A DNA stretch of 64,000 bases from Octopus bimaculoides (Eukaryota), in the NCBI RefSeq assembly GCF_001194135.2, contig NC_068985.1:34299723-34363722 (forward strand), in the 5' to 3' direction. Under the pieces are notes generated by a model. The model worked only from the letters and a program-made list of their open reading frames with translations. It did no database searches and was not told where the DNA came from. The first letter of the stretch is position 1, and each line of letters begins with the position of its first letter. Position numbers and translations under genes: made by a program. Positions 44,701 through 63,510 of the stretch are shown piece after piece.

Positions 44701-46154
44701 TTGCTGAGACATTGCATCCTTTAAAACCTGCATGCTTCCTGAAATTTGCCAACACTATACCTGATATCCCCACCTCCATACACATGCACACATGTATAAC
44801 ATGACTTATACACTGTTTACTTTCCTGGCTTTTGTACATAATTCTATGTACTGTACATGCACCTTTGATGAGTTGTAGTACATCTGAGCACTATATACAA
44901 TAATTTCATTATTATTATTATTAATAATAACGTATACCAGAGATGATAATTCTATTAATATGGGGAGAATTAAAGAGCAGGAATTGGCTGTGTTTGATAA
45001 ACCTCAAAAGTTGTACAACATCATACCAACATCACACAGGCAAGATGTGGATTCTATACTGTGAAATGTATGCCCTCACTTTGTGCACAGTAATGCAATT
45101 TGATTATTGCATGTCAAGAAATCAGGGCCTTAGGTGCACAAAACTGCATTCAGACAGTAGAAACATAGACAATGATTAATTCAGTATCCTTAGGGTTTCA
45201 TTTGGCTTGTTAGATGTAGTAGATAAGTAGTTAAAATGATTAGTGCAAGAAGTAGAACTCGTGATTGAATTGTAGCTAGGGCTGGAATAGATTACAAGAA
45301 GTGCTAAAATTTTCTTCCCTTATTAAAAATGAAAAGAATTTGCAGCTTCATATGAAAGGTAGATGGCATGGTGCATTTGTGAGGAGTTGAAATGATGCAT
45401 GAAAGAATGATATGAATATTGGTTAGGAATGGAATTAACACCATTTGTTGGATGTGCAATACTAACATGTATCACTGACTGAGTTGAAGCTGAGAAATTG
45501 ATTTTTTTCAGTGGATGTATAATGAAAAGGCATTTTTGTTGGATTAAATGTGTGGTAGAGAGAAATGGATGTGGAATGAAATGATGGTATAATAAGGACA
45601 CACTGCAGAAAAACTATAAACTTTGAAGTATGACCTGAAAACTCTGAAGCTTATTAATACATTACTATAATGTACTATAGAACATATTCATAGTGCTTTT
45701 AGCTAACACTTTGTGTTACAATGATTGTAAACAAACTGTCTGTACAATATCTGTGCTGATATAAAAAGGGTGTACAACTGTGTGTGCATTTTTATTGTTT
45801 TTGAAGTCTTCAGCAGCAACTGTGTACCCCAGTATCTACTGACCATACAATATAGGACAGATAATTAGTGAAAAATTCTTCATAGCCCTTTATCTTTTTA
45901 ATATATTAATGCAGGGTCTTTTTAATATATCTTTTCAGAAATTACAGAAGACTTTTTGGTAACAACTATTTGTTGTACTGTAGGAAGTGTATTATTATTA
46001 TTAATAACTTTGAGGCTTCTTGCTTATAAATTCCACAAAATAAGAGGTTGGTATGTTTTACACATTATTAAGATTTGTTAACTACATTGAGATACATATT
46101 CTTCAAACTCTCCTGGTTAAATATATGTTGGAATTTGTGTATATATATATATAG

Positions 46155-49100: not shown

Positions 49101-50779
49101 AGTTTTCATAATTTTATCAATGCTGTACAATCTCACATATCCCAATGGTGGGGTCTTCCTCAAGGAACTGCTTAACTTTCTGGGTGAAATCAGCACTTCT
49201 CACCCTTTGTTTACTACAATTATGAGTTTCCCAAAGTAGCCATAGTGTTAATGTCAGAGTTACTATCCTCTGACTATTTCCTTACCCTCTGGACCATGTG
49301 CAGTGATAGCTTTAGGTAGTCAGCCTTGGTATTCATGCCAACACAGTATTCATGCCAGCACAGACTGCAGACACCACCACCTTCTTTTTCCACTCCTCAG
49401 GCCACTTGTATTCATTTAATCGATCTGGGTTTGTTATTTCTTTGAAGTCATACATAAACAATATTAGTTTACACCATAACTTTCAAAATAGTATTTGATT
49501 TTTGGTTTAAACAGAGACACTAATTTAAAATACACATGCTGTACTTCGATAAAACTTTGAAAATGTTAAATTCCATTGCATATCTTTACCATTGTCTCAA
49601 AATTATTAATCTTTATTAATAATCCAGTCTATAAAATATTCCCATTTTATATCTAATTTCTTGAATATGTGGAAAATAGTCAATATTGATAGTACACACC
49701 ATAATTTCAGAACAGTTTGAAACTTGAAAGAATGCAAGCAACCTTAAATAATATCAATCTCTAACATGTTTCTATTAATTGGTGTATGTGTATGAGTATG
49801 AATGTGTTTGTGATTCTAGCTCCTTAGTATTTACTTTGGTAGTATCAGTACACTACTAACATAGTTTTTTAAAAAAATCTTATTTATAACCATGTTATCT
49901 ATTCTTTGTATTAATTTCTTAAAGATATGGACACTGCTTGTATGAATGGTTCGGAGAAAACTGATGGCAAGCATATAAGCATTTCTTTAATAAATTACAT
50001 TCATTAAAGCACAAGTTTATTCTTTTATTGATTTCAGCCCAAGGCTATAGCCATTCTGAAATTCTGATATTATACAGTACACTATTTTTGTTTCTAAATA
50101 CACATTTATACATAAAATATACATTACAATATATTTCAATATTATTTTTATACTACTTTTGTGCAACAGTAAAATAGTTAAAACATACTCTCCAAGCAGA
50201 TAATTCTGCTCAAATATTATTTAATTTCTTGAATCAGTGGAAGATCATTATATTGTTGTTCAAAACATGTTGCATACATATATTTTTGTATAAAATCATC
50301 TTCATTTAGCATCCATTTTCCTTGCTGGCATGGGTTGGACAGTTTGACAAGAGCTGGCAAACTGAAGAGCTGCCCAGGCTCCAAATGTCTGTTTTGACAA
50401 GGCTTCCAAGGCTTGATGCACTTCTTAATGTCAACCACTTTCCAGAGTCTATTGGGTGCTATTCATGTAGCACTAGCACAAGCTCTTTTTACTTGGCACC
50501 AACACAAGTGCTTTTTACAACATCAGCACAGGTGCTTTTTATGTGGCATCAGCACTGGCACTAGCACCTGTGGAATCACCAAGTAGCTTGCAAGTCAAAG
50601 ATCTTTCAGCTGAGAGAGGGAGTAGAACCAAAAGAATTGGTTGTATCTGAGGCAAGAGGTAAGAGTGTGATAGAGGGACAGAGATATCTCTATCTCTACT
50701 AAGAGTAGATATTTGGCTACCCCAGTAGGACAAGAAGGAGAGGAAGGTGGGAAAGAGTTAAAGAGAAAGACTGAGACAC

Positions 50780-50835
<56 letters not shown>

Positions 50836-53800
50836 CACATGGTACAGTGAGAAGCAGTATAAATAGTAAAGAGGGGATAGAGTGGATGTTTCAAAAGAGT
50901 GTGACTGAAGCTGTTTAGAGATAACAAGTGGTGGTGAAAGGAATTGGAATGGTTGGGAAGGGTCTTATTGGAGAGAGAGAGAGAAAAAGAGAGAGAGAGA
51001 GTGCGCGCGCGTGTGTGTGTGTGTGTGTGGAGGGTCCTGTCGTGGAGTGTCAGGAAGATGGGTTTTGACAGAGGACAGGTTATATATGTGTCTGAGAGGG
51101 TCATGGCTGTATGTACAGATGGCTATGATTTTACTTAGTTTGATATGTCTTCTCAAGCACAGCAAATCACCAGATGTTTTGGTTCCTTGTCATCTCCTCT
51201 GTGAGGTCCAATACCTGAAGATAATTTTTCACCACTTTGTCCCATGTCTTTCTGGGTCTACCTCATCTACAGGTTTCTTCCACATTTAGAGACAGGCACT
51301 TCTTTGTGCAGCTCTTTTCCTCCATACACATCACTTGATCATACCAGTGCAATCTTCTCTCTTGCACACTATATCTAATGCTTTTTATGTCCAATTTTTC
51401 TCTTAAATCACTGATAATGGAATACAATTCTCGGGGTATGAATTCAAGAACTTCTGTAAAATGCATGTGATAAAGCATATTTTCACTCCTTCCTACTACC
51501 TGAGGTCAAATGGGCAGGTGAAAAGATTTGTGGACATATTCAGAAGAACGTTAAGGAAAGCTAGGAATGAGTCAAGTAATGACGAAGTTCTAATGAAATT
51601 CTTAAGGGTATGTAGAGTAACCACCCCCAATCATCATCATCATCATCATTTAGCATCTGTTGTCCATGCTGGCATAAGTTGGACGGTTTGACCGGGGCTG
51701 GCAAGCTGGAAGACTCCAGTTTGCACCAGACTCCAGTTTGATTTGACATGGTTTCTATGGCTGGATGCCCTTCCTAAGTCCAACCACTCTGAGAGTGTAA
51801 TGGGTACTTTTGTGTGCCACCAGCATGGGTGCCATTTGAATGATACTGGTAACTACCACAATTGCGATTTTGCTTTGCTTGATGGGTCTTCGTCTCAAGC
51901 ATGACATAATGCCAAAGATCTCAGTCATTGCCTCCATGAGACCCAACACTCAAAAGAAACTCAGCAACTTTGCCTTTGCGAGGCCTAACACCCGAAAGGA
52001 ACTCACCTCTGTGAGACCTAATGCTCAAAAGGAATTCAGCCACTTTGCCTTCATGAGGCCCAACATTTGAAGAGAACTCAGCCACTTTGCCTCCGTGGGG
52101 CCCAACGCTCAAAAGGAACTCAGCCTCTTTACCTCCATGAGGCCCAATGCTCAAAAAGTGCTCTTTACATGCCACTGGCACGGGTGCCAGTTACATGACA
52201 CCAGCATCAGTCACGATCATGATTTTACTTAGCTTGATGGGTCTTCTCAAGCACAGCATATCGCCAAAGGTTTCAGTAACTGGTCATTGCCTCTGTGAGG
52301 CTCAGAGTTTGAAGATCATGCTTCACCACCTTGTCCCATGCTTCCTTGGTCTACCTCTACCACAAGTTCCCTCCACAGTTAGATATCAACACACCTGACT
52401 TCGTCAATATGCATCACATGACCATACCAGTGCAGTCGTCTCTCTTGCACACCACATCTGATGCTTCTTATACCTAACTTTTCTCTCAAGATGCTTATAC
52501 TCTGTTGGACATGCACACTTACATTGCACATCTAATGAAACACACTGGCTTCATTTATTTCAAGCCTACGCATGTCAGCTGTCACAGCCTGTGTTTCCCT
52601 ACCATGTAACATAACTGTACGCACACAGGTATCATACAATCTGCCTTTCATACTGAGAGATAGGCCCTTTGTTGCCAGCAGAAGTAGGAGCTCTCTGAAC
52701 ATTGCCCAGCCTTATCTTATTCTCACAGATATGTTCTTGGAGCATCTACCTCCGTTACTAACTTGGTCACCTAGATAATGGAAGCTATCTAGTACCTCCA
52801 GCTTGATCACCTGGCAGTTGATGAAGTCTGTTTTCTGCACATTTTCAGTGTTTTTTGTACCTGTGCATCTTCCACATATAAAAGTTATTTTTCCTGTTAA
52901 CCTTTCTCTGATTTTGCTGCACCTTTTATGTGTTCAAATCTTACACTGGGTACATCTTATGGAGTTTCTACCTAACACCTTTTCTACAGATTGAGCAGGG
53001 CCATCTACCTGAAGGGATTTGTGATTTGTCTGCCTTCCTACTTACTAAAACTTTGGTTTTTACTAGGTTAACTCTAAGGCCCTTCGATTCTAGACCTTAT
53101 TTCCATACCTGAACTTCTCTAGTTCTGATAGGGATTCAACTATAAGAGCAAAGTCATCAGCATAGAGGAGCTCCCAGGGGAAACCTGTCTTAAATTCTTC
53201 TGTTATTGCCTGGAGGACTATGATGAACAAGAGGGGGATGAGCACCGATCCTTGGTGAACCCCTACTTGTACCCTGAATTCTTCATAGTATTCATTGCTC
53301 ATCTTCACCTTACTGGTAGCATCCCTGTACAAGGCTTGTAGAAATCTCACCAACCACTCATCCATCTCTAGTTTCTGCATTGACTACCAGATAAGAGATT
53401 GGGTGACCTTGTCAAAGGCTTTCTCCAAGTCAACAAAAGCCAAGTACAGAGGTTTGGTATTTCTAACCAAGTATAGAGGTTTGGTTAAGTATTTCTCCTG
53501 AAGTTGTTTTACCAGAAATATAACATCAATGGTGCTTCTACCCGGCACAAAGACAAACTGCATCTCATCTAAACTAACTCTCACCCTAATTTGTTATGCT
53601 ATGACTCTCTCCATAACTTCCATCACCTGATCCAACAATTTGATACCTCTGTAATTATTTCTATTTAAGGCATCATCTTTGCCTACGTAGCAGTTGACTA
53701 TGGTACTGATACACCTGGTATCTTCCACCAATGACAATTGGTGGAAGATACCAGGCTGCCATCTGACATGCCCATTGAAATCTTCAGCCTCAAAGATGAG

Positions 53801-56800
53801 ATCATTGTCATTCATCTTTGCGGTATCCTGCAGAAGAATATCATGAAAGTAGTCCCTCTGTTCATTTGGTAGGCCAACTTGTGGGGCAAGACTAGCCTGA
53901 GCTTAAGCACTCTATTGCACACTCTTACTACCACCATGACCATATCCACTCATTTCTCTGTAAGAAGTGTGCTTGCACCACCGACTCCATCACTGTTATC
54001 TTCCCAGAAGATTTTATACCTATGTGTCTTGCCTGTGAGGAACCTGGCTGAAGCTCCTCTCTGCCTTACCTCTTGGATACTGCATACATCAACATGGCTC
54101 CGTTCAAACATCTCAACAATCTCACTAGACCTACATTTCAATGTGCCTACATTGACAGTGCCAACTCTGAAAACTGGGAAAGGGACGTGGGAGGGAACAT
54201 GGGAAGGAGAGATGTTATTCAGCACCTGAAAAGAAGGTTTCCATGATCATTTGATAACAGACATTTCACATCAGTTGTTCTTGCTTTTAACATATCATCA
54301 TTCAAACATGTTAAAATTGTTACCCTTACTAGGGGTAATGTAAGCATAGTAAATATAAGTGTTATGAGCATTGTAAATATAAGTGTTACTGCTGCAAACA
54401 TAAATATAGATATACTAATGTTAAATTAAGTAAGTAAATGGGCAGCTGTTTGATTAGTCCATTATATATAGAGAGAGAAAGAGAAAGAGTGAGAGAGGGG
54501 GAGAGAGGGGAGAGAGGGAAAGAAGGTAGTAGGTGGTTTGGAAGGGAGGGAGGGACAGAGGTATGTAGGTCTTCTGGTGCAGAAGTGAGGCAGAGATATG
54601 TGGGAGTTTCCAGTATAAGGGAAGAGATTACCAGTATAAGAGAAGAGATTACTGGTACGAGAGAAGGGATTTCTGGTATTGGTAGTGGGGGCAAGAAAGG
54701 ATGGGCACATTGTGAACAAACAAAGGCTAGATTCACCACGCGAATTAGCAGCAAGAGGACAATAGTGAGGCAAAGAATGATAGAACACATGAGAATTATG
54801 TCAAGTATTTAAAGAGATATGATTCTAAAGTTATTAGAGAAAGTAATGAATTACAGGTTATGAAGTTATTCTAACTGAAGAATGTTAGCATGTTAGTAAT
54901 ACATGTTAAATGAATAAAAGAATGATGAAAAATTGAAAACTAGAGAAATTTCTTTACTTAGTGACTGGACATTTCACGTCGTGATATGATAGTGTCAGAT
55001 AGTAGGGCAAGATGTGAAGGTTTGGGATAAATCATGTGCAAAGGAGTTCTTTATATAATCTACAGCCAGAAGTGGTTAAATAAGTTGCTAGCTTCACCAG
55101 AAGAAAATCGAAATTGCAGCAACAGGACAATAGTGAGGCAAAAAATGATAGAACATATGAGAATTATGTCAAGTATTTAAAGAGATACGTTTCTAGAGTT
55201 ATAAGAGAAAGCCATGTACAAAGTCACGAAAGTCACCCACAGAGTTGATGTTCACGAGAAGAACAGAATCGATTTATGATAATTTATTGCCAGAGAAAAA
55301 AAGATGTAAAGGAAATATGAAAGGTTTAATGAAATATTTTGAAACAGGAGACAAAGTGCATTTTAAAACCTACAGAAATGGTAAAGAAGAATGGGAGGAT
55401 GGCCATGTAACCAAAAAAAAAAAAAAAAAAAANNNNNNNNNNAAAAAAAAAAAAAAAAAAGAAACTATCTAATTAAAGGACCATGTTAGGAACATAAGAG
55501 ACACATAAATCAGCTGAGGAATGGAGAAAGATTCCTATGGAAGTATTTTTTATGTATTTGATGTCCCAGTACCAAAAGAAATGGAGTTGGATAGAACCAG
55601 TGTGAGAAAACGGAAGCAGACTGAACACCTAGAGATAAGGCCCAAGTGAAAAAGAGACTAAAAAACAATAATAAATAAAATTTCTTTATTTCTTTGGAAC
55701 TGAAAATCTCAAAAGGAGAGATGTTGTGGTGAGAGTATGACACCCTCTGATGGAAATAGATGGGACCATTACATATAAATAGTAGCAGTCTGACATAATC
55801 AGCAGTTTGTAGTTTGGTCTTCAAAGTCCAGGTACAGGTTACAGTTCAAGTTAGTGAATTGGAAATATTGATTGTTGGCTTATGTGTTTATTACTGCTGC
55901 TGTTTTTATTTTGTATTGTTACAGTATATTCTTTATCTATCATCAACAATACCAACTGTACTATGATATTGGAGGTGTACGGATATAACAGTAAAATAAA
56001 CGTTTTCTAGCTCCTTTTCTGGTTGCCTGATATAGATCTTTGCCACTACTACTCTGCCCATCCTTCCAGGCTTGTTTCTTTGGTCTAATGGCCCTACGTA
56101 CTATGCTGTTCCATTATCCTATCATGTCACCTTAGGGCTGGAAGGGACTTTGCACGAGCCACAAATTTGGTCAGTAACCCTCATTAAGTTATTTATTCAA
56201 CCCCACCTCCAGTAAGTATAATTGATAGGGATTGTACATAACAAGATCTGAGAATGGTCTAAACTCGAATAGAAAGTTAATAACAATAATTTATATCAAA
56301 CTATTAATGTGTGTGTGTGTGACTATGAGACTATTAGTATCTTTTCTGGTAATATATTTAAATGTTATTTATATTTTTCTTTAATTCTTAAAGTCCTGGA
56401 TGGTGCTTATGATAATCTTTCAAAGAAACCTGAAGGTGAGCATATAGACATTTCCTAGATGCACTTCTATTCATTAACGCATATGTTAGCAAATACCTTG
56501 GCTCATTCCTTTTTTTGAGTAGAATGTACAGTGTAATAAAATATCTATGCATATATATATAAATAAAACTATCAAAATGTTAAATTTCCATTGCATGTAT
56601 AAGAAATGTCTTGTAAACTTTCTTATGTAACTCCATACTTTTGCACCCTTCACTGATAATCCAATTCATAAACATATTTTGTAAGTTTTATTTATACAAA
56701 TAAACAAAATAATTATATAACTAGTAATGAATTTACTAGACATTTGCTTGAAGATGAGACAAATAGTTTGGATGAGATTTTCAATGGGGAATATTATACA

Positions 56801-59800
56801 CTGAAATGAACTGTTTTTGTTGAGGTAACCACAATGAGTCCTGCTTTTGGATACCACTAGCATGAAAATAATCTTTAAAAATCTGTCACTAGACAGATTT
56901 TTGAACAGTTTCTCTTAATGGTAACATGATTATTTTAAAATATCAGTGAAATATGTTACAGAAATAGTGACATATGAAACACTAAGTAATATTAAATTTA
57001 GTCTATAGACAGCAAGGTGGTAGAATTATTAGCATGCCAGGCAAAATGCTTAGTGGCATTTCGTCCATCTTTACGGTCTGAGTTCAAATTCCACTGAGGT
57101 TGACTTTGCCTTTCATTCTCTTAAGATCGATAAAATAAGTACAAGTTGAACACTGGGGTCAATGCAATCAACTTCTCCCCTCTTTGAAATTGATGGTTCT
57201 GTGTCAAAATTTGAAATCAATATTAAATTTAGTCATACTATGTTCTGAGTTCAAATTTCTTTGAATGAAATTTCACCTTTGAACCTTCTGTAAATACCAC
57301 TGTTATATAATTTCTGTATTGAAATTAGCATTTTGCATGTGGAATATAATTTTTATTGATTTCTTCTTCTTCTTCTTCTTCTTCTTCTTCTTCTTCTTCT
57401 TCTTCTTCTTCTTCTTCTTCTTTTTCTTCTTTTTCTTCTTCTTCTTCTTCTTCTTCTTCTTCTTCTTCTTCTTCTTCTTCTTCTTCTTCTTCTTCTTCTT
57501 CTTCTTCTTCTTCTTCTTCTTCTTCTTCTTCTTCTTCTTCTTCTTCTTCCCCTTCTTCTTCTAATGTCTGCTTTCTATGCTGGCATGAGTTGGATGGTTT
57601 GACTGAGGACTAGTAAACCAGGAGGCTGCACCAGGCTTCAATCTGTTCTGGCGAAGTTTCTACAGCTGGATGCCCTTCTTAGTGCCAACCACTCCAAGAG
57701 TCTAGAGGGTGCTTTTTACGTGCCACCAGCATGGAGGCCAGTCAGGTGGCACTGGCATCGACCACACTCAAATGATGCTTTCTATATACCACAGGCACAG
57801 TTGCCAGTCAGGCGGCACTGGCATCGGCCACATTCAAATGCTGCTTTTTACATGCCACCGGCACGGATGCCAGTCAGGTGGTGCTGGCATTGGCCACAAC
57901 AATGATTTCCTCTTTGCTTACTTATATCAAATGAATTTATTAGGTAATACTATTCTTTATTTAAATACATCAATACGAAGATGAAGAACTTATACTTTAT
58001 GTTCAGTTTGATGGATTTCAACATAAAAATATTTAATACATTCTCTTCAAGCTATAAATATGTCCCTCTTTATCTAATGTTTTGAAGCTGTGGATGATCA
58101 TTATATTGAAGTTAGTGAACTCCAAAACATGTGCCTACAACTCCCTGGTAAGTATAATCAATATTGATAGCACACAACATAATCCCAAAATAGTATAAAC
58201 TTGAACAGAAAGCTAATGACTACACTTTATAACAATCTAAATATATTCTATCATTTTGTGTATGTATGTGTGTGTGCATGTGCATTCGCAACATACTAGC
58301 AACATATTTTAAATGTTATTTATAGTCACATTATTTATACTTTTATAAAATTTCTTGAAAACAAAGATGGTGCTTATTTCTAAGAAACTTGATTGTTAGC
58401 ACATAGGCAATTCATTAATAAAATTATAGTCCTTAAAGCAAGAGTTAACAAATATCTTAGCTTATCCTTTCTTTGAGTAGAACATACAGCTTAATAACAT
58501 ACATATGTTTTTAATTAGAAAAGTTTAAAAATGTGAAAATCCCATTGCAAATATAAAGAACTTGACTTCTTACACATATTAATCCATATTAATAATCCAG
58601 TGCATACATTTTTCATAATTTGCCATATTAAGTGTATACAGTGCTCAGGTGCACTACAACTTGTCAAAAGTGTGCATAAAGCATATGCAATATTGTACAA
58701 ATGTCTGGAAAGTGAACAGTGTATGAGTCAGATACATGTTTGCATGTGTATGGAGGGGAGAAAATCAGGTGTAGTGTTGGCGAATCTCAGGGAGCACGGA
58801 AGTTTTGAAGGATGCAGTGCTCCGACAACTAACAACTGATGCCAGCAGTTTGTTCCATACTTCAGCAACTCTTAGCATGGAAAACTGTTTCCAAAAGTCA
58901 TGGGAGCTGTGCTGTTTTCTGACTTTGTAAACATGACCATGGGTATTAGACAAGTGGAATTTGAAAAGGTACTCAGAGTTATTGTTAGTAAGATGGTTAA
59001 TAATTTTATGGGCGTCTGCCAAGTCAGCTGCCAGATGTCGGAGTTTCAATGTATCCATACCCAGGGAAGTAAGGTGTTCAGAATATGGCAAATGCCCGAT
59101 GGAGGGTATTCTCTTGGTTGCACGTCGCTGAACGGTTTCCAGACGATTAATATCCTGGGCAAGATAGGGGTTCCAAACCAGAGACACAAATGATATGCCA
59201 AATCTATCATAATTGATCTTTCTGTTTTTTCATAAGAAATAAATTTATGTTTCTCAATACATCTATGAGAAGATGAAGAGCTTATACTTTATATTCAGTT
59301 TGGCTGTATTTCAAATATATTTTCTTTCTCGATACAGGTTTATATAGAGATGTTTATATACAAAATATACATTATAATATATTTTTTCTACTTTCTGTGC
59401 AATATTGAAACACTTCAAATATCCTAACAATAAATACACCCATTTAATATTAAATTTCTTTTAGTTTTTGAAGATGAACATGCTGAAGATAGCGAGCCTA
59501 AATATGTATGCATGAAACAACCCAGTAAGTATGAATTAATATTGGAAGTACACAGCATGCCTTCAGAATAGTGCAAAACTTAAATAGAATGCTAACACTG
59601 ACTTTTTTCTGTTGATGTGTGTATGTGTGTGTGCACATGTATGCGATTATTTCAGTGTGTCTTTAATATTTATTCTGGTAGTATTAGCACACTTCTAACA
59701 TATCTTAAATATTATTTACAGCTATGTTATTTATTTTCCTTTATACTTCTTAAAGACTTGGATGCTGTTTATGCTAACATTCCAAAGAAACCTGATGGTA

Positions 59801-60548
59801 AGTATTTAAATGTATTGCAGGACAAGTTAGTAAAAAATTTGGCTCATTCTTTCTTTGTTGGTAGGATTGCAATTTAAACTTTGAAAATGATAGAATTCCA
59901 TTGAATATATGATAAACGTCCTGCAGGCATTCATTTGTACCTCCAATATTTTACCATTTTATGACTCCAGTTTGTAAAACTATTTTCTGTAAGTTTCAGT
60001 TGTACAACAAATAAACCAAATAATGATATAAGTAGTACTGCATTCACGAATGTTTTGTGTTCATTTTTCAATCTCTTGAAGATCTCGATATGCACTTCTT
60101 TTATGTAATTTCTATAAAAAAAAATTAGCATTTTGTGGATAGAAAAGAATTTTGAGTATTTTACTTTATGGAGGAACCTTCTCTCCAAACACTAAATTTG
60201 ATATGCCATATCTATCAAAACTGATCTTTCTGTTTTTTCATAAGAAATGAATTTATGAGGCAATATTTTTCTGTTTCTCAATACATCTATGAGAAGAGGA
60301 AGAGCTTATACTTTACATTCAGTTTGACTGTATTTCAAATATATTTTCTTTCTCAATACATGTTTATATAGAGATGCTTATATACAAAATATACATTATA
60401 AGATATCTTTACTACTTTCCGTGCAATATTGAAACACTTAAAATATCCTAACAATAAATACACCCATTTTATATTAAATTTCTTTTAGTTTTTGAAGATG
60501 AACATGTTGGAGATAGTGAGCCCAAATATGTATGCATGAAACAACCCA
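5756..60548 (+). CDS. Multi-exon Ig-superfamily type I membrane receptor (7 Ig-like domains + TM + repeated Tyr-motif cytoplasmic mini-exons); incomplete at both ends
   Basis: Exons with AG acceptors and GT/GC donors, all phase 1-1, join into one open frame. Ig Cys/Trp patterns, then a hydrophobic span followed by basic residues, then Tyr motifs. Architecture is nephrin/CD22/Siglec-like, but no orthologue can be named. Confidence 0.85.
6707..6990 (-). mobile_element. RTE 3'UTR/tail fragment
   Basis: (CAT)n tail plus the ggatgcccttcctaatgc block, next to (TA)n. Confidence 0.7.
7690..8500 (-). mobile_element. Penelope-like element: Asn-rich linker and GIY-YIG remnant
   Basis: KGILYRCKVTSEGQDNYCIGSIEKYIKRIANHENTFKN follows an N-rich linker, with frameshifts. 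Confidence 0.7.
10115..10480 (+). mobile_element. RLE-type non-LTR retrotransposon (R4/Dong-like) endonuclease end
   Basis: EHNMPDIVVWDRGAKVCTIIEVSCFTD..KEKEDIY..IIIGALG shows the PD-(D/E)xK RLE pattern. Confidence 0.75.
11900..12278 (+). mobile_element. Mariner transposase C-terminus and right end
   Basis: LGWEKIPHPPYSPNLAPSDYHLFRSLQNHL...GIKKLVNRWKEVVDNQGKYIDD*, ending at a TA. Confidence 0.85.
12659..12979 (+). CDS. Ig-like domain exon 2 (C2/nephrin-like)
   Basis: tatttcag|TT...T|gtaagc, 321 nt. LPKSVTIKAISDTVLVENQNKSYECLVTDTNLEFSVFWLITW...SKLTLHLNKKFKDLQCVAYF...LDMPIK. Confidence 0.9.
13608..13668 (+). ncRNA. Minimal type I hammerhead ribozyme motif
   Basis: CTGATGA (13619), gccta/tagg stem II, GAAA (13643), actag-t-ctagt stem III, GUC triplet (13655-13657). 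Stem I is only partly paired. Confidence 0.5.
13824..14035 (-). mobile_element. RTE 3'UTR/tail fragment
   Basis: (CAT)n tail next to (TA)n, plus the ggatgcccttcctaa block. Confidence 0.65.
15120..15600 (-). mobile_element. RTE ORF2 fragment
   Basis: KFNITKTKILVS...CKLWTHKRHSG...LEVVDNFCYLGDLISSEG. Confidence 0.75.
16200..17120 (+). mobile_element. RTE ORF2 fragment
   Basis: GRWPCSIYRKGVGRNSIRCTQCKLWIHKR; HISETWAMTVEDIRRLERNEASML. Confidence 0.8.
17170..18440 (+). mobile_element. RLE-type (R4/Dong-like) LINE remnant spanning an N gap
   Basis: KFGLEKCAKATLKRGK...YKYLG...KEYYRRVRSILKTEL; after the gap, QKISLLGTAHILCKTL. Confidence 0.7.
18500..19400. mobile_element. Cluster of about 5 decayed tRNA-SINE copies
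   Basis: Repeated gagttcaaattcc..ctttcatcct..gtcaat..aagtaccagt blocks separated by (ATT)n. The first copy is inverted. Confidence 0.65.
19642..19896 (+). CDS. Ig-like domain exon 3
   Basis: catag|AT...T|gtgagt, 255 nt. TPMKKITLNVLTAKVCAGTPMKFQCSWKGGNPPASVTL...IVKCLGSHITANVSYEKNITVC; CxxxGGNPPA is a nephrin-type motif. Confidence 0.9.
20270..21130. repeat. Internal tandem duplications upstream of the Helitron coding remnant
   Basis: aatagct.tataact block at about 20466, 20622 and 20883; gaagtgattttgtt.gtatggctacttgg block at about 20737 and 21009. Confidence 0.8.
21150..22810 (+). mobile_element. Helitron: PIF1-like helicase C-terminus and 3' end
   Basis: MFLRNLD..GHCN...LIPRIP...FTRKQFPVKPAFAL..NKAQGQTF...SHGQLYVALSRV. 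Terminal hairpin and CTAG|T at 22771-22810. Confidence 0.88.
23050..24206 (+). mobile_element. DNA transposon remnant, Chapaev3 (CMC)-like transposase C-half
   Basis: KIILPLLCIKLGIMKQFVKTL; LGTNMRINLHYLHCHFDKFLENSGDISNEQGECFYQ. Ends ...GTAGTG. Family assigned from recalled motifs. Confidence 0.55.
24765..25120 (-). mobile_element. tRNA-derived SINE immediately upstream of Ig exon 4
   Basis: ccaaggtgccatgcagtggcactgaaccc..tgtggttgggaagc is a reverse tRNA-like head, with an internal microsatellite. Confidence 0.6.
25168..25422 (+). CDS. Ig-like domain exon 4
   Basis: tttacag|CT...T|gtaagt, 255 nt. LPERIKIKSDEPFLEGQEGNLHCGTINGYSEKYNYRWNRN...LNNKVYTCYVSS...HWVNVE. Confidence 0.9.
26690..28260 (-). 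mobile_element. RTE LINE fragments (APE start and RT)
   Basis: LGIDEWLVRVMQVMY...VHQESVLISVL...WEILYADD. Confidence 0.75.
28638..30161 (-). mobile_element. Helitron (mostly in an N gap) with both termini
   Basis: Minus-strand A|TCTATATATATAAAA start with a (CTGT)n tract, FSHGQLYVGCSRVG helicase motif VI, and hairpin CCCGGGCAACGCCGGG followed by CTAG|T. Confidence 0.75.
32703..32951 (+). CDS. Ig-like domain exon 5
   Basis: tttatag|AT...T|gtatga, 249 nt. VPDITASEDVTLIENQASIVNCSAKGNPIPEV...VFCVANAKSTKHGNLTSRKKINILLK. Confidence 0.9.
33788..34080 (+). mobile_element. Penelope-type GIY-YIG remnant
   Basis: NVVYSI...MYIGETSRSIAE*...LYQHAKDHH...LRQIRECILI. Confidence 0.65.
34100..35185 (+). mobile_element. 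Ty3/Gypsy gag-protease-RT remnant
   Basis: EDYITYAGRVNRECEKFKLDELTPDMFRCLIF, then a degraded VKMQL protease region. Confidence 0.6.
35419..35673 (+). CDS. Ig-like domain exon 6 (GC donor)
   Basis: ttaaag|AT CCT CCT CAG..., ends CCAG|gcaagt, 255 nt. PPQVNINISEGMYNATIINCTASDGNP...SNTGTWECHVSN...YKIP. Confidence 0.88.
37712..38017 (+). CDS. Ig-like domain exon 7 (membrane-proximal)
   Basis: caccag|TG...GAAG|gtaagt, 306 nt. KPIFSS...GETVIFKQCFYSHPKSDVKWQKN...SLKIEDIKGNDFGIYVLTVENPIGKEVTIFTLRSE. Confidence 0.9.
38790..39320 (+). mobile_element. RTE 3'UTR/tail fragment
   Basis: ggttggcgttaggaagggcatccagctgtagaaac block and a (GAT)n tail, preceded by (TA)n. Confidence 0.7.
40511..41985 (+). mobile_element. 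5'-truncated RTE LINE
   Basis: LLYADDLALIAES...FRYLGDQVSSG through to the 3'UTR and (GAT)n tail. Confidence 0.85.
43866..44930 (+). mobile_element. CR1-clade LINE 3' part
   Basis: GVPQESVFGPLL...HADDIKLY...LQSDLD...DLGITVSSDLHW, ending in an (ATT)n tail. Confidence 0.85.
45939..46046 (+). CDS. Transmembrane exon
   Basis: cttttcag|AA, in phase with exon 7. ITEDFLVTTICCTVGSVLLLLITLRLLAYKFHKIR is a hydrophobic span followed by basic stop-transfer residues. Donor is AG|gttggt (phase 1) or 4 nt later TG|gtatgt (phase 2). Confidence 0.8.
46790..47575 (+). mobile_element. Chapaev3-like transposon left end and N-terminal Cys-rich region
   Basis: TAA|CACTGGAC start; PDNFCC...YFGCKVGDQDKRWVPPICC..C...PMV..NHVSDYYFC...SVPH. 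Confidence 0.55.
47930..48720 (+). mobile_element. pogo/Tigger-like DDE transposase remnant
   Basis: YNVDETELFWK...IPKNTTSLLQ...ISESWDEVKCITLNGA. Confidence 0.65.
49925..49966 (+). CDS. Cytoplasmic mini-exon A1 (Tyr lost, GC donor; may be inactive)
   Basis: ttcttaaag|AT...G|gcaagc, 42 nt, DMDTACMNGSEKTD. Homologous to A2/A3 with TAT changed to TGT. Confidence 0.5.
50238..50293 (+). pseudogene. Mini-exon B1, 5' part (donor missing; pseudo-exon or alternative terminal exon)
   Basis: gaatcag|TG GAA GAT CAT TAT ATT GTT GTT CAA AAC ATG reads VEDHYIVVQNMLHTYIFV*. Aligns to B2, with a deletion of about 9 nt; an RTE tail follows. Confidence 0.55.
51631..54230 (-). mobile_element. Decayed RTE LINE (APE, RT, 3'UTR)
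   Basis: FRVGTVNVGTLKCRSSEIVEMFERSHVDVCSIQE; GVHQGSVLIPLLFIIVL...LLYADD; (CAT)n tail at 51631. Confidence 0.85.
55722..55990 (+). repeat. 3' LTR of the Gypsy element
   Basis: Polypurine tract aaaaggagaga (55711-55721), then TGTTGT...ATAACA. No 5' LTR was found. Confidence 0.6.
56198..56222 (+). pseudogene. Orphan 3' end and donor of a B-type mini-exon
   Basis: caaccccacctcca|gtaagtataatt resembles the B2/B3 ends (caactccctg|gtaagtata, caaccca|gtaagtatg) and is followed by the B-to-A intron homolog and A2. Confidence 0.45.
56394..56435 (+). CDS. Cytoplasmic mini-exon A2 (YDNL)
   Basis: ttcttaaag|TC...GAAG|gtgagc, 42 nt, LDGAYDNLSKKPE. Confidence 0.75.
57010..57225 (+). mobile_element. tRNA-derived SINE
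   Basis: gagttcaaattccactgaggttgactttgcctttcattc..gatcgataaaataagtac. Confidence 0.65.
57360..57561. repeat. (CTT)n microsatellite, about 200 bp
   Basis: Direct reading of the sequence. Confidence 0.95.
57562..57900 (-). mobile_element. RTE 3'UTR fragment
   Basis: ctacagctggatgcccttc block plus gccagtcagg.ggcactggc repeats. Confidence 0.7.
58088..58147 (+). CDS. Cytoplasmic mini-exon B2 (YIEV)
   Basis: ttttgaag|CT...CCTG|gtaagt, 60 nt, VDDHYIEVSELQNMCLQLP. Confidence 0.7.
58361..58394 (+). pseudogene. Dead A-type mini-exon copy
   Basis: gatggtgcttat...aagaaacttgatt|gttagc aligns to A2. The acceptor AG is mutated (gaaa) and there is an 8-nt deletion; an alternative AG gives an immediate TAA. 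Confidence 0.65.
58765..59190 (-). mobile_element. CR1-clade LINE 3' end inserted between mini-exon units
   Basis: VWNPYLAQDINRLETVQRRATKRIP...LRHLAADL; same family as 43866-44930. Confidence 0.85.
59465..59524 (+). CDS. Cytoplasmic mini-exon B3 (YVCM)
   Basis: ttcttttag|TT...CCCA|gtaagt, 60 nt, FEDEHAEDSEPKYVCMKQP. An in-frame alternative acceptor lies at 59473. Confidence 0.75.
59756..59797 (+). CDS. Cytoplasmic mini-exon A3 (YANI)
   Basis: cttcttaaag|AC...GATG|gtaagt, 42 nt, LDAVYANIPKKPD. Confidence 0.78.
60489..60548 (+). CDS. Cytoplasmic mini-exon B4 (YVCM)
   Basis: ttcttttag|TT...CCCA|gtaagt, 60 nt, FEDEHVGDSEPKYVCMKQP; 56/60 nt identical to B3. Confidence 0.75.
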
Positions 60549-60959
60549 GTAAGTATGAATCAATATTGGAAGTACACAGCACGCCTTCAGAATAGTGCAA
60601 AACCTGAAAAGAATGCCAACACTAACGTTTTTCTATTGATGTGTGTATGTGAGAAGCCTTCTCTCCAAGCACTAACTTTGAAATGCCATATTAAGTAAAA
60701 TTAGACGTTCTTTCTCCTTATTTGTTCATACCAAATGAATTTATTAGACAATTCCTTTCCTTTTCTGAATACACCAATGAGAGGAGAGGAGGAAGAACTC
60801 ATACTGTACTCTGAGTTTGACAGGATTTCAAATAATTTTTTTTACCATTGAATATTTAGACATATAATACTGAAACGCCCTATGTAACCACCTTATTCTC
60901 ATACCCACTTGTTGGCTCTTGCTCTAGATGTTGAATGAGGTGGGAGAGACTGGTTTATT

Positions 60960-63510
60960 GTAATTCACTGAATAAACTCTGTACCAAAGCTCTATGCAAG
61001 CTGGCAAGCATTTTTGCAGATCTTCGTTTCAGGTGATGACAAAATTCCCACAACTACCTTACCGCAACCACTCCCAAGTACTTAATCTCAGGGCCACTAC
61101 CATCAATGTTAGCACAATGAAAGGACAGAGTGGGGAGATTGCTGAAATGTTAGAGCGATGCCATGTTGATGTATATGGTGTACAAGAAGTTAGACGGAAG
61201 GGAGTCTCAGCTAGATTCCTCATGGGTAAGAGACAGAGATTCAAATTCTTCTGGGTCAGCAGGAATGATGGAGTGGGTGGAGTAGGCAGACTGTTAACAG
61301 AAAAGTGGGTAGATAAAGTAATTGAAGTAGTCAGAGTATGTGAAAAGATAATTAAGATGAGACTTATCATAGGTAAATTAACAGTTACATTTATCTCTGC
61401 TTATGCCCCTCAGTCTGGGCTGACTGATGAGCAGAAGGACCAATTCTATGAGTTCCTTTTGCAGACTACCTCAACAACAAATGACAGAGACTTTGTTATT
61501 GTGGCTGGTGACCTCAATGGACATGTTGGAGAGTACCCCCATGGATTACAGGGATTGCATGGGGGCTATGCCTTTGGACCTAGAAATGAGGAGGGAACAA
61601 GACTGCTGGAGTTCTGTGATGCAAATGATCTCATGATCTGCAACACTAACTTCAAAATACCAGCCAGCCACCTAATCACTTATCAGTCCGGTGAGCACAT
61701 AAGCCAGATTGACTACCTCCTCACCAGGAAACGAGATAGATGGATGCTTAAAAATGCAACGTCTTTCCCAGGTGAAGAGTGTACAACCCAACATAGGTTA
61801 CTAGTTAGTGACTTCTGAATTAAAGCTAGAAAGACACAGAGAAATAAACCAATCTGGAAAAAAAGATTATGAAAGCTCAAAGACCCAGCAAACAAACAAA
61901 AGTTTAGAGATTTGCTAATGGAAGCTTCTCACGAAAGAGAAGAAGAGTTGGTGACATATAGCTTAGAGGACAACTGGAAGTTCTTGAGGGGTAATCTGTT
62001 GATGGCTACAGATGAAATCTGTGTTTGGTGCAGAGTCCCAGCTAGACCAAGGGTGACATGGTGGTGGAGCAAGGAGGTTGACAGTGTTATAAAGGCAAAG
62101 AGACAGGCCTGGAAATTATGGGAAAATGGTGGAAGCAGGTAGCCAAAAGAGGCGCTAGACATCAGGTAAACATAGCAAAAGGAGTAGCTGAAGGTAAGAG
62201 ATTTGCAAATGTCCTACAACGTGAGGATCAGAGGTGTGAGGTGTTCAGGATTGCAAAGCAGTGTGTCAGAGAAAATAGAGATGTGGTAGGGGAGAAATGT
62301 GTGTGAATAGATAATGGTATGCTTGCACTTAGTGACTCAGAGAAGAAAGGTGCATGGAAGTGTCATTATGAAAGGTTACTAATTGTGGAAAATGAATGGG
62401 AGAAGGAGAGTTCACCAAATATCGAACCAGTTGAGGGACCAGTCGTCACAGTTGAAAGCAGCATAATAGATAAAGCAGTTAAGGACATGAAGACAGGGAA
62501 AGGCCCTGAGCCATCAGGAATTACTGCTGGCTGAGATTATAAAAATTTCCGGTGGCATAGGATACAGCTTAGTCACTCGTATAGTTAATCAGGTTATTCA
62601 GGAAGGCACCATCCCCAACGATTGGTGTAGTAGAATTATAGTTAGCTGCTATAAGGGTAAAGGTGATGACTTAGATAGAAACAACTACAAAAGTATTAAA
62701 CTGGTAGACCAAGTCATGAAAGTTACTGAGAGGGTTATAGCTCAATTGATTAGAAATAGAATTAAACTAGATGAGATACTGTTTGGTTTTGTACCTGGGA
62801 AGAGTACCACAGATGACATCTTCCTAGTGAGACAGCTGCAGGAAAAGTACTTGGCCAAAAGTAAGCCATTGTACTCAGCCTTCACTGACCTGGAGAAGGC
62901 TTTCAACAGAGTTCCCCACTCTGTTATATGGTGGTCTCTAAGGAAGTTAGGAGTAGAGGAGTGACTTGTTAGAGCTATCCAAGCCATGTACAGTGGTGCT
63001 GTCAGTAAGATGAGAGTCGGCTATGAATACAGTGATGAATTTGGCATTCAGGTAGGGGTTCATCAGGGTTCGGTTCTCAGCTTGTTCTTATTTATTATAG
63101 TCCTCCAGGCCAGAACAGAGGAATTCAAAACTAGATTCCCATGGGAACTACTATATGCTGATGACCTTGCCCTTATTGCAGAATCTTTAGCAGAATTGGA
63201 GAAGAAATTCCAGGTATGAAAACAAAACCTGGAATCAAAGGTCCTTAAAGTTAACATAGCTAAGACAATAGTTGTTGTTAGTAAGAAAGAAGATAAAACT
63301 TTCTTTCTGTCAGGCAAATGGCCCTACTCAATAAGTAGGAAAGGAGTTAGAAGAAATTCCATTTGCTGCATTCAGTGTAAACTATGGACACATAAGAGAT
63401 GCAGTGGTATCACAGGTAGATTAACAGATAGAGTAGTCTTTGTATGTGGAAGATGTGCAGAAACAATAAGCACTAAGAGCACACAGGAATTAGATTCAAC
63501 AGAATATTGT
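60960..63510 (+). mobile_element. Near-complete decayed RTE LINE (APE + RT)
   Basis: APE ORF 60994-61818 (DVYGVQE, SAYAPQ, AGDLNGHVG, IDYLL, QHRLLVSDF); RT fragments FGFVPGKST, DLEKAFNRV, GVHQGSVLS, LLYADD. Confidence 0.9.

What the first reader, a model, noticed from the sequence alone, without database searches (positions are those of the whole stretch)
49500..60900. Ig receptor tail assembled from a tandem array of symmetric Tyr-motif mini-exons
Downstream of the TM exon are at least six degenerate genomic units of about 1 kb. Each originally carried a 60-nt B exon and a 42-nt A exon. Six copies can be spliced in frame: A1, A2, B2, B3, A3 and B4, although A1 has lost its Tyr and has a weak GC donor. 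All are phase 1-1 and multiples of 3 nt, so any subset stays in frame. The predicted tail is ...KIR-DMDTACMNGSEKTD-VLDGAYDNLSKKPE-AVDDHYIEVSELQNMCLQLP-VFEDEHAEDSEPKYVCMKQP-NLDAVYANIPKKPD-VFEDEHVGDSEPKYVCMKQP... From established SH2 specificity, pY-x-N is the Grb2 motif and pY-x-x-M the PI3K p85 motif; YxxL/I/V can be SHP-type or endocytic, but none is a strict ITIM. Inference: docking sites expand and contract by unit duplication and could be combined by cassette splicing. That would be Dscam-like diversification on the intracellular side of an invertebrate Ig receptor. The ORF track misses these exons as a set.
Basis: partly seen in the sequence, partly recalled or inferred. Interest (0 to 1): 0.9.

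Follow-up and report, generated by a model that had tools for sequence, protein, structure and literature searches.

The report
Octopus Ig receptor tail mini-exon array
The region holds the first six of eleven tiny, interchangeable exons that build the intracellular tail of an octopus immunoglobulin-type receptor, each carrying one tyrosine docking motif. Public gene models already show them used in different combinations, so the finding is real but is a variation on a known theme.

Summary
Confirmed. The window is Octopus bimaculoides DNA. It covers most of gene LOC106869178: 7 of its 8 Ig exons, the TM exon and six tail mini-exons. They are 42 nt (A) or 60 nt (B), phase 1-1, with an AG acceptor and a GT donor (GC for A1). 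The predicted peptide matches the in-window tail of UniProt A0A0L8HQQ3 exactly.

Fifteen public isoforms of this gene differ only in which mini-exons they include. Five more mini-exons and two terminal exons lie beyond the window. The units are tandem duplicates; the B4 and B5 units are 97% identical. Four pseudo-exons, transposon insertions and one deleted A exon show decay.

The N-gap lies in a poly(A) run inside a 6.4-kb intron, so it touches no exon or reading frame. It could still hide sequence.

Two paralogs, Argonauta and a cuttlefish relative also put one Tyr motif on each mini-exon.

The likely function is a multi-site phosphotyrosine scaffold: YxN is the Grb2-class motif and YxxM the PI3K p85-class motif. 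Splicing would set the number of sites. This is inferred from motifs only.

PECAM-1 and arthropod Dscam tails are precedents, so the "Dscam-like" novelty is overstated. I found no paper describing this family.

The parts
45939..46046 (+). Transmembrane and juxtamembrane exon (EITEDFLVTTICCTVGSVLLLLITLRLLAYKFHKIR), phase 1-1, 108 nt
   Evidence: Identical to residues 762-797 of A0A0L8HQQ3.
49634..49702 (+). B-type pseudo-exon. The acceptor region and post-exon intron are retained, but the exon body is deleted.
   Evidence: nhmmer hits to B-model positions 9-52 and 111-135 are adjacent; alignment.
49925..49966 (+). A1 mini-exon (DMDTACMNGSEKTD), 42 nt. Tyr is replaced by Cys and the donor is GC (G|gcaagc). 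It is probably decaying.
   Evidence: Present only in A0A0L8HQQ3 and A0A0L8HQV4. Exon identity to A2 equals intron identity.
50201..50260 (+). B-type pseudo-exon, 5' half. The acceptor AG has mutated to AT, and the exon is cut off at about 50260 by inserted DNA.
   Evidence: (D8, D18).
50261..56190 (.). About 5.9 kb of inserted repeat and retroelement DNA that splits the old B exon and inflates the A1-A2 intron. It contains RT fragments on the minus strand.
   Evidence: Unit homology stops at 50260 and resumes near 56212. RVT_1 hit at 53093-53380(-). Internal repeats D3, D4, D11, D15.
55433..55442 (.). Assembly gap (10 N) inside a poly(A) run. It is intronic.
   Evidence: The same gap is in the chromosome-level assembly.
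56192..56211 (+). Approximate 3' end remnant of the split B exon. An intact GTAAGT donor and the post-B intron follow from 56212.
   Evidence: (D16).
56394..56435 (+). A2 mini-exon (VLDGAYDNLSKKPE), 42 nt, YxN motif
   Evidence: Included in 11 of 15 isoforms.
58088..58147 (+). B2 mini-exon (AVDDHYIEVSELQNMCLQLP), 60 nt. It keeps the upstream Tyr (YIEV); the YxxM Tyr is replaced by Asn.
   Evidence: Present in all 15 isoforms.
58321..58424 (+). A-type pseudo-exon region with a lost acceptor and an 8-nt deletion
   Evidence: nhmmer E = 9.5e-09; alignment.
59465..59524 (+). B3 mini-exon (VFEDEHAEDSEPKYVCMKQP), 60 nt, YxxM motif
59756..59797 (+). A3 mini-exon (NLDAVYANIPKKPD), 42 nt, YxN motif
60489..60548 (+). 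B4 mini-exon (VFEDEHVGDSEPKYVCMKQP), 60 nt, YxxM motif
60646..60843 (+). Start of the next repeat unit. The A exon of the B4 unit is deleted. No exon follows before the LINE.
   Evidence: blastn against the 1024-bp unit covers positions 930-1022 and 13-90.
60994..63216 (+). LINE retroelement (APE-type endonuclease plus reverse transcriptase) in the B4-B5 intron
   Evidence: Pfam Exo_endo_phos and RVT_1 hits.

Best explanation
Window 49.5-60.9 kb is the proximal part of the cytoplasmic-tail exon array of Octopus bimaculoides LOC106869178. This gene encodes a single-pass receptor with eight Ig exons. It belongs to a cephalopod IgSF family with at least one paralog about 0.47 Mb away on the same chromosome.

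The tail is built from two kinds of symmetric (phase 1-1) mini-exons that arose by tandem duplication of a B-A genomic unit:
- A, 42 nt, consensus DMD[DG][VA]-Y-V-N-[VI]-S-[RK]KP[DG];
- B, 60 nt, consensus xVEEQ[YH]AE[VI]SEPK-Y-L-x-M-KQP.
The gene has 11 such exons, six of them in the window, followed by two constant terminal exons. Any subset stays in frame, and annotated transcripts skip them singly or in blocks.

Likely mechanism, inferred and not shown. Ligand-driven clustering lets a Src- or Syk-type kinase phosphorylate the tyrosines, which sit in acidic contexts. pY-x-N sites would recruit a Grb2/Drk-class adaptor and pY-x-x-M sites the PI3K p85-class subunit. The receptor would then act as its own multi-site scaffold, as LAX, LAT, CD19 or Gab/IRS do.

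Splicing and gene-level duplication or decay would set the number, ratio and spacing of docking sites. Examples are YxxM pairs 20 residues apart, and A5, which carries the only strict ITIM.

Shown: exons, splice sites, frames, duplication and decay, annotated isoforms, and conservation of the motifs and the architecture. Inferred: phosphorylation, binding partners, and any biological role of the isoform choice.
For: Exons and frames.

Identity of the gene: 96-100% match to A0A0L8HS72 / LOC106869178. The window equals L001 12774-76773 of CM046605.1.

Isoforms: 15 isoforms parse completely into the 11 mini-exons plus the terminal part, and they differ only by cassette inclusion. The first residue of each exon switches with the last base of the exon spliced before it, as phase-1 splicing predicts. 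B7 reads I after a B exon, which ends in A, and V in the models that place it after B6. B5 reads V after an A exon, which ends in G, and I after B4. Paralogs LOC106879981 and LOC106874069 also skip single A or B units.

Architecture elsewhere: the paralog locus has one unit per 42- or 60-nt exon with the same splice-site style. The remaining exons of this gene are mapped.

Duplication: B4 and B5 units 97% identical, B3-A3 and B7-A4 units 92%.

Constraint: older exon pairs are 0.76-0.83 identical against 0.62-0.74 for their flanks, although B2-B3 is no better than its flanks. With Tyr and +3 left free in the pattern, Tyr is kept in 20 of 21 B units, and +3 is Met in 14 and Leu in 6. Tyr and Asn+2 are the commonest residues in A units.

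Depth of the architecture: Argonauta has two 51-nt A-like exons with the same 'ttaaag' acceptor and 'G|gtaag' donor. The cuttlefish Acanthosepion pharaonis has five 60-63-nt exons; three read ENGNEPQYI, one VNGNEPVYMN and the first EDGHEPHYAE, and three of the five carry YxN.

Motif meaning: YxN is the Grb2 motif, YVNV the Gads motif, and YxxM the p85 motif in LAX, LAT and NTAL (PMC3342071). p85 binds phosphotyrosine pairs 10-30 residues apart (PMC6937578). SH2-binding motifs are enriched in alternative exons (PMC3424572).
Against: I could inspect no RNA reads or long-read transcripts. The isoforms are genome-based models (2015 GenBank/UniProt and RefSeq Gnomon).

Near-identical exons could create false junctions or mimic copy-number alleles. 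B3 and B7 differ by 1 nt, B4 and B5 by 2 nt.

Motif matches are short. Every Tyr site is also a YxxPhi pattern. There is no evidence for phosphorylation or for the specificity of the octopus SH2 domains. Expression site and ligand are unknown.

Recent duplicates are as similar in introns as in exons, so they say nothing about selection. A1 looks neutral. B6 appears only in the 2015 models.
Confidence: 0.7

Rival explanations
1. The tail is mainly inhibitory or a trafficking signal. The tyrosines would act as ITIM/ITSM-like sites that recruit an SHP-2/Csw-type phosphatase, as in PECAM-1, or as YxxPhi endocytic signals for AP-2. They would not be Grb2 or PI3K docking sites.
For: All 11 YxxPhi matches overlap the proposed SH2 sites. 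A5 (VAYVNL) fits the strict ITIM pattern. A4 plus A5 give YVNI-x10-YVNL. The Argonauta relative ends with TIYADI, an ITSM-like pattern, and CVYADL. PECAM-1 is the closest architectural analogue, and the function of its tail depends on exon-encoded tyrosines (PMC2132561).
Against: Only 1 of 13 tail tyrosines fits the strict ITIM pattern, and none inside the window does. The residues conserved across units are Asn at +2 in A and Met or Leu at +3 in B. These define the Grb2 and p85 classes rather than ITIM or AP-2 classes (PMC3342071). The readings do not exclude each other.
Confidence: 0.2
2. The exons are real, but the combinatorial diversity is largely an annotation artefact. One or two isoforms dominate. 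The other models would come from multi-mapped short reads among near-identical exons, or from haplotype copy-number variants produced by unequal crossing-over between units.
For: B3 and B7 differ by 1 nt and B4 and B5 by 2 nt, with 94-100% identical flanks. Isoforms with B2, then B3 or B7, then A4 are what a deletion allele between the B3 and B7 units would give. All isoforms are model-derived. Three assembly gaps lie in or near the array.
Against: Skipping also affects unique exons that recombination between repeats cannot remove: A2, A5 and B6. Isoform X6 joins B3 to B7 with both exons present, which a homologous deletion would not produce. Two paralogs with less repetitive tails also show single-unit skipping.
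Confidence: 0.2
3. The array is a neutral by-product of local tandem duplication in a repeat-rich genome. Inclusion of extra units would be splicing noise with no signalling consequence.
For: There are many decayed copies, TE insertions and one deleted A exon. A1 evolves like its intron. Recent duplicates show no excess exon conservation.
Against: Motif-defining residues and the one-motif-per-mini-exon architecture persist across paralogs, octopods and a cuttlefish. Most older exon pairs are more conserved than their flanks.
Confidence: 0.1

Closest known systems
PECAM-1 (CD31) cytoplasmic domain, exons 9-16
   Same: It is a multi-Ig single-pass receptor whose tail is encoded by a run of short exons. 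These exons are alternatively spliced, and a tyrosine on one cassette exon changes the receptor's behaviour (PMC2132561).
   Different: There is no detectable sequence relationship (no PDB hit). From memory, PECAM-1 tail exons are not tandem copies of two repeating motif types. Its key motifs are an ITIM/ITSM pair rather than YxN and YxxM.
Arthropod Dscam cytoplasmic tail (Penaeus monodon, Daphnia)
   Same: It is an invertebrate IgSF receptor. Seven non-constitutive tail exons can be included or skipped, and this adds or removes SH2-binding or ITAM motifs (PMC6851185).
   Different: The ectodomain architecture differs (9Ig-4FN3-Ig-2FN3), with mutually exclusive Ig exon clusters. The tail exons are heterogeneous, not a duplicated array. 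The octopus gene shows no mutually exclusive clusters.
Transmembrane adaptor proteins LAX, LAT and NTAL; also CD19, Gab/IRS and BCAP-type scaffolds
   Same: They carry many YxN (Grb2), YVNV and YxxM (p85) sites on one disordered tail (PMC3342071, PMC6937578). This is the closest functional analogy.
   Different: The adaptors have almost no ectodomain. From memory, their sites are not each on a cassette exon. There is no homology.
Nephrin / SYG-2 / Sns family
   Same: The nearest named non-cephalopod relatives of the ectodomain are bivalve proteins labelled 'nephrin-like' and 'syg-2-like' (E = 2e-13) and a shrimp 'nephrin-like' protein (E = 6e-4). From memory, these are multi-Ig receptors with a Tyr-rich tail that nucleates SH2-adaptor assemblies.
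   Different: No FN3 domain was detected and there is no YDxV motif. The similarity is weak.
Titin PEVK and similar arrays of symmetric mini-exons (from memory)
   Same: The genomic logic is the same: tandemly duplicated in-frame mini-exons whose number is tuned by cassette splicing.
   Different: That is a structural spring, not a signalling tail. It is unrelated in sequence.

Membership tests
IgSF receptor with a tail encoded by alternatively spliced mini-exons (PECAM-1 type, architectural class) | Several Ig domains, each on its own phase 1-1 exon, plus one TM segment | tested here: met
   There are seven Ig exons in the window and one upstream. All are multiples of 3 with AG/GT boundaries (one GC donor). 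The TM exon is 45939-46046.
IgSF receptor with a tail encoded by alternatively spliced mini-exons (PECAM-1 type, architectural class) | Cytoplasmic tail encoded by a series of short exons | tested here: met
   There are 11 exons of 42 or 60 nt plus two terminal exons.
IgSF receptor with a tail encoded by alternatively spliced mini-exons (PECAM-1 type, architectural class) | Tail exons alternatively included in transcripts | tested here: inconclusive
   Fifteen annotated isoforms differ only by cassettes, and paralogs do likewise. These are model-level evidence; no reads were inspected.
PECAM-1 (homology) | Detectable sequence similarity to PECAM-1 | tested here: not met
   phmmer of the 992-aa protein against all PDB chains gave no hit at E <= 0.001.
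Nephrin / SYG-2 / Sns | Ig domains followed by an FN3 domain before the TM segment | tested here: not met
   Pfam found only Ig families in the 786-aa model that runs up to and beyond the TM segment.
Nephrin / SYG-2 / Sns | Significant sequence similarity to family members | tested here: inconclusive
   The hits are weak. These are proteins that NCBI names 'nephrin-like' or 'syg-2-like', and the names are only labels.
Nephrin / SYG-2 / Sns | YDxV (Nck-binding) tail motifs | tested here: not met
   There is no YDxV in the 223-aa tail; the nearest is YDNL in A2.
Dscam | 9Ig-4FN3-Ig-2FN3 ectodomain with mutually exclusive Ig exon clusters | tested here: not met
   There are eight single-copy Ig exons and no FN3.
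Grb2-class SH2 docking site | Y-x-N in an accessible cytoplasmic segment | tested here: met
   The motifs are YDN (A2), YAN (A3), YVN (A4, A5) and YEN (terminal exon). Asn at +2 is the commonest residue across family A units.
Grb2-class SH2 docking site | Tyrosine is phosphorylated and binds the Grb2/Drk SH2 domain | not testable with these tools
   This needs phosphoproteomics or pull-downs.
PI3K p85-class SH2 docking site | Y-x-x-M | tested here: met
   YVCM occurs in B3, B4, B5 and B7. Across family B units, Tyr is kept in 20 of 21, and +3 is Met in 14 and Leu in 6.
PI3K p85-class SH2 docking site | Phosphorylation-dependent binding of p85 SH2 domains | not testable with these tools
   This needs biochemical assays.
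ITIM-bearing inhibitory receptor | [SIVL]-x-Y-x-x-[IVL] in the tail | tested here: inconclusive
   None occurs in the six in-window exons. There is one (VAYVNL) in A5 outside the window, and isoforms X3 and X7 skip it.

The most novel reading that the evidence does not exclude
Cephalopods may have a receptor family whose intracellular signalling valency is programmable. Tandem duplication supplies a reservoir of Grb2-type and PI3K-type docking exons. Cell-specific cassette splicing would then choose how many are used and in what order. Juxtaposition of exons would also create composite sites: B-B pairs with YxxM 20 residues apart for bivalent p85 binding, and A-A pairs with a relaxed ITAM spacing. 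Skipping A5 would toggle the single ITIM. This would tune signalling thresholds, much as site number tunes LAT or nephrin condensates.
Probability: 0.15. Interest if true: 0.7.

Novelty: new variant of a known kind. Interest (0 to 1): 0.42.

Why it matters
The gene and its isoforms are already in RefSeq and UniProt as 'uncharacterized'. I found no paper that mentions these genes, so the biology appears undescribed.

If the splicing is real and regulated, this locus is a natural experiment. It would show how the number and spacing of SH2 docking sites on one receptor shape signalling. It would also show how new docking sites arise by exon duplication in a lineage, cephalopods, known for unusual transcript diversification.

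The principle itself has precedents: cassette exons that carry linear motifs (PMC3424572), the PECAM-1 tail (PMC2132561) and the Dscam tail (PMC6851185). This tempers the surprise.

Tried and rejected
- A tail-only protein search (TM plus six units) returned nothing, although A0A0L8HS72 contains 74 identical residues. I treated this as a word-index limitation, not as absence.
- A PDB sequence search with the full protein gave no hit.
- A literature search for six LOC identifiers gave no paper. Searches for cephalopod IgSF/ITIM and for tandem exon duplication in receptor tails found nothing specific.
- The O. sinensis 'ortholog' LOC115212116 (1220 aa, about 26 units) could not be used to count units. 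Its model spans 780 kb and overlaps another gene, so it is probably chimeric, and no DNA was returned.
- I looked for a juxtamembrane exon like those of the paralogs between the TM exon and A1. Only chance-level matches appeared.
- Locus look-ups for non-longest isoforms failed by design of the index.
- Rejected: that the gap could break an exon or the frame. It is intronic.
- Rejected: membership in Dscam, PECAM-1 or nephrin. See the membership tests.
Full report
**What the window is.** The best protein match to a spliced model of the + strand exons is UniProt A0A0L8HS72 from Octopus bimaculoides (96% identity, 100% coverage). Its 90% cluster holds 16 proteins. All are isoforms of LOC106869178 or the equivalent UniProt entries. 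The locus in the chromosome-level assembly is CM046605.1, about 34.30-34.38 Mb, fetched as L001. It is base-for-base the window (window = L001 12774-76773) and carries the same N-gaps. The signal-peptide exon and the first Ig exon lie upstream of the window. Inside the window are seven Ig exons and the TM exon:
- Ig exons: 5756-6061, 12659-12979, 19642-19896, 25168-25422, 32703-32951, 35419-35673 and 37712-38017;
- TM exon: 45939-46046.

All are multiples of 3 nt and phase 1-1. Pfam sees only Ig families.

**Checking the gap first.** The 10-N gap at 55433-55442 sits between two runs of about 20 A. It lies inside the 6427-nt intron between A1 (ends 49966) and A2 (starts 56394). That intron is swollen by about 5.9 kb of repeats and reverse-transcriptase fragments. 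No exon is near the gap. Every mini-exon is defined by its own splice sites, so the predicted reading frame does not depend on continuity across the gap. The newer assembly does not close it. Whether sequence, even another unit, is missing there remains unknown.

**Checking the observation.** All six peptides are found at the stated places:

| Exon | Coordinates | Length | Donor |
|---|---|---|---|
| A1 | 49925-49966 | 42 nt | G\|gcaagc (GC) |
| A2 | 56394-56435 | 42 nt | gtgagc |
| B2 | 58088-58147 | 60 nt | gtaagt |
| B3 | 59465-59524 | 60 nt | gtaagt |
| A3 | 59756-59797 | 42 nt | gtaagt |
| B4 | 60489-60548 | 60 nt | gtaagt |

Each follows a T-rich tract and AG. GC donors are used elsewhere in this gene: the Ig exon ending at 35673 has CAG|gcaagt.

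The repeat units are real. A 1024-bp unit (59238-60261) carries B3 and A3 and recurs at 60262-60651 with 93% identity. Older copies are recognisable around 49.55-50.26, 56.2-56.7 and 57.96-58.4 kb. Profile searches with exon-plus-flank models find four decayed copies:
- a B copy with the exon body deleted (49634-49702);
- a B copy with AG mutated to AT, truncated by inserted DNA (50201-50260);
- the 3' end and intact donor of that B copy, just before 56212;
- an A copy with a lost acceptor and an 8-nt deletion (58321-58424).

The A exon of the B4 unit is deleted. The next unit starts at 60646 and is followed by a LINE with endonuclease and RT domains. So 'six degenerate units, each once B plus A' is a fair description. 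Unit length varies from about 0.57 to 1.4 kb.

**Independent confirmation and the rest of the array.** Beyond the window the same gene has:

| Exon | L001 coordinates | Note |
|---|---|---|
| B5 | 80077-80136 | |
| B6 | 80570-80629 | |
| B7 | 81261-81320 | |
| A4 | 81552-81593 | |
| A5 | 86346-86387 | |
| T1 | 87174-87228 | carries DIYENN |
| T2 | 93899-93944 | carries GYYSTL, then the stop codon |

**Splicing.** The 15 public isoforms parse completely into these exons and differ only in which are present. They comprise seven current RefSeq models, four older RefSeq models and UniProt entries from the 2015 GenBank annotation.
- B2, A4 and at least one of B3/B7 are always present.
- A2, A3, B4, B5, B6, B7 and A5 are variably present.
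- A1 occurs in only two 2015 models and in no RefSeq model.
- B6 occurs only in 2015 models.

The first residue of each exon changes with the last base of the preceding exon, as phase-1 splicing predicts. B exons end in A and A exons end in G. So B7 reads I after a B exon, and B5 reads V after A3 and I after B4. Isoforms of two paralogs, LOC106879981 and LOC106874069, also drop single A or B units.

These are computational models; I could not inspect reads. B3 and B7 differ by 1 nt and B4 and B5 by 2 nt. Some junctions could therefore be mapping artefacts or reflect deletion alleles. Skipping of the unique exons A2, A5 and B6, and the B3-to-B7 junction of isoform X6, argue that real skipping occurs.

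**Evolution.** The B4 and B5 units are 97% identical over about 800 bp and the B3-A3 and B7-A4 units 92% identical. For these recent copies, exons and introns are equally similar. Most older pairs show exons at 0.76-0.83 against flanks at 0.62-0.74, though B2-B3 is no better than its flanks. A1-A2 shows no excess (0.67 against 0.66), which fits decay of A1. Paralogs carry 5, 8 and 11 units.

LOC106874069 lies about 0.47 Mb away on the same chromosome. It has the same layout: 42-nt A and 60-nt B exons, a B-to-A intron of about 210 nt, and the same splice-site style.

An exhaustive HMMER search found only 129 relatives at E <= 0.001. The close ones I looked up are octopod. Argonauta hians has two 51-nt A-like exons with the same 'ttaaag' acceptor and 'G|gtaag' donor, and a conserved DIYENN exon. 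A cuttlefish relative (Acanthosepion pharaonis CAE1168733, E = 1.8e-57) has five exons of 60-63 nt. Three read ENGNEPQYI, one VNGNEPVYMN and the first EDGHEPHYAE; three of the five carry YxN. 'One tyrosine motif per symmetric mini-exon' is therefore found across cephalopods. The A/B array is an octopod elaboration of it.

The O. sinensis model with about 26 units spans 780 kb and overlaps another gene. I did not trust it as an orthologue count.

**Motifs and likely mechanism.**
- Family consensus for A is DMD[DG][VA]YVN[VI]S[RK]KP[DG].
- Family consensus for B is xVEEQ[YH]AE[VI]SEPKYL[CE]MKQP.
- With the Tyr and +3 positions left free in the pattern, Tyr is kept in 20 of 21 B units, and +3 is Met in 14 and Leu in 6.
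- The 223-residue tail of the longest isoform has 13 Tyr, 51 Asp or Glu, five YxN, four YxxM and one strict ITIM. The ITIM is VAYVNL in A5, outside the window. There is no YDxV, NPxY or ITSM.

YxN is the Grb2 motif, YVNV the Gads/Grb2-family motif and YxxM the p85 motif in the transmembrane adaptors LAT, NTAL and LAX (PMC3342071). p85 prefers two phosphotyrosines 10-30 residues apart (PMC6937578), and adjacent B exons place YxxM sites 20 residues apart.

The best-supported reading is that the receptor carries its own multi-site phosphotyrosine scaffold. The number and mix of sites would be set by exon duplication or decay over evolutionary time and by cassette splicing within the animal. Phosphorylation, partner identity and any role of isoform choice are inferred, not shown.

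Alternative readings remain open: ITIM/ITSM-like inhibitory signalling, YxxPhi endocytic signals, or neutral expansion. They are scored in the rivals section.

**Comparison with known systems.** The architecture matches PECAM-1, whose tail is encoded by exons 9-16. These are alternatively spliced, and a tyrosine on exon 14 is functionally decisive (PMC2132561). It also matches arthropod Dscam tails, where seven exons can be included or skipped and carry SH2-binding or ITAM motifs (PMC6851185). SH2-binding motifs are generally enriched in alternative exons (PMC3424572).

The octopus gene is not a member of either family. It has no PDB-detectable similarity, no FN3 domain and no mutually exclusive clusters. 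The nearest named non-cephalopod relatives are weak 'nephrin-like' or 'syg-2-like' bivalve and shrimp proteins. The nephrin hallmarks, FN3 and YDxV, are absent.

What is distinctive is that the tail exons are a tandemly duplicating two-type array, still expanding and decaying.

**Verdict.** The gene and isoforms are already annotated but uncharacterised, and I found no literature on them. I rate it a new variant of a known kind, of moderate interest.

Noticed in passing
window 35673-35679: The constitutive Ig exon 35419-35673 uses a GC-AG intron (CAG|gcaagt). GC donors are therefore functional in this gene, which makes A1's GC donor less implausible.
   Followed up: partly
window 57361-57562: A (TTC)67 microsatellite, 95% pure, lies in the intron between A2 and B2.
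   Followed up: no
window 60994-63216 (+); 53093-53380 (-); 40512-40967 (+); 43903-44472 (+): There are several LINE-type retroelement fragments (APE endonuclease, reverse transcriptase, one with a PHD finger) inside introns of the receptor gene. The one at 61-63 kb sits just after the start of the unit that follows B4.
   Followed up: partly
window 57737-57898 and 51796-52225: Related 66-nt and 75-nt tandem repeats occur in two different introns of the array. They are probably parts of the same transposable element family.
   Followed up: no
window 21832-22155 (+) and about 29800-29850 (-), next to gap 28965-29799: These ORF fragments end in a motif (FSHGQLYVxxSRV) that I recall from PIF1/Helitron-type helicases. 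Pfam gave no hit for the first fragment at E <= 0.001; the second was not scanned.
   Followed up: partly
L001 81552-81593 and 86346-86387 (beyond the window): When exons A4 and A5 are joined they give YVNI-x10-YVNL, a relaxed ITAM spacing. A5 is the only strict ITIM. Isoforms X3 and X7 skip A5, so splicing toggles these patterns.
   Followed up: partly
L002 33286-36882 (Acanthosepion pharaonis): The cuttlefish relative has five mini-exons of 60-63 nt, 0.3-1.4 kb apart. Three encode ENGNEPQYI, one VNGNEPVYMN and the first EDGHEPHYAE; three of the five carry YxN. This is an independent amplification of a different Tyr-motif exon.
   Followed up: partly
O. sinensis LOC115212116 (no DNA returned): The RefSeq model spans 780 kb and contains another called gene. 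It probably fuses tails of several paralogs.
   Followed up: no
window 64000 / L001 76774-77783: The window ends exactly at a 1010-N assembly gap that lies between B4 and B5. A further gap (L001 83763-83905) lies between A4 and A5. Unit counts for this gene are therefore lower bounds.
   Followed up: partly
window 2937-3782 (+) and 7945-8499 (-): These are long low-complexity ORFs in the first introns. Each ends in a short conserved-looking C-terminal block and is probably derived from a mobile element. I did not analyse them.
   Followed up: no
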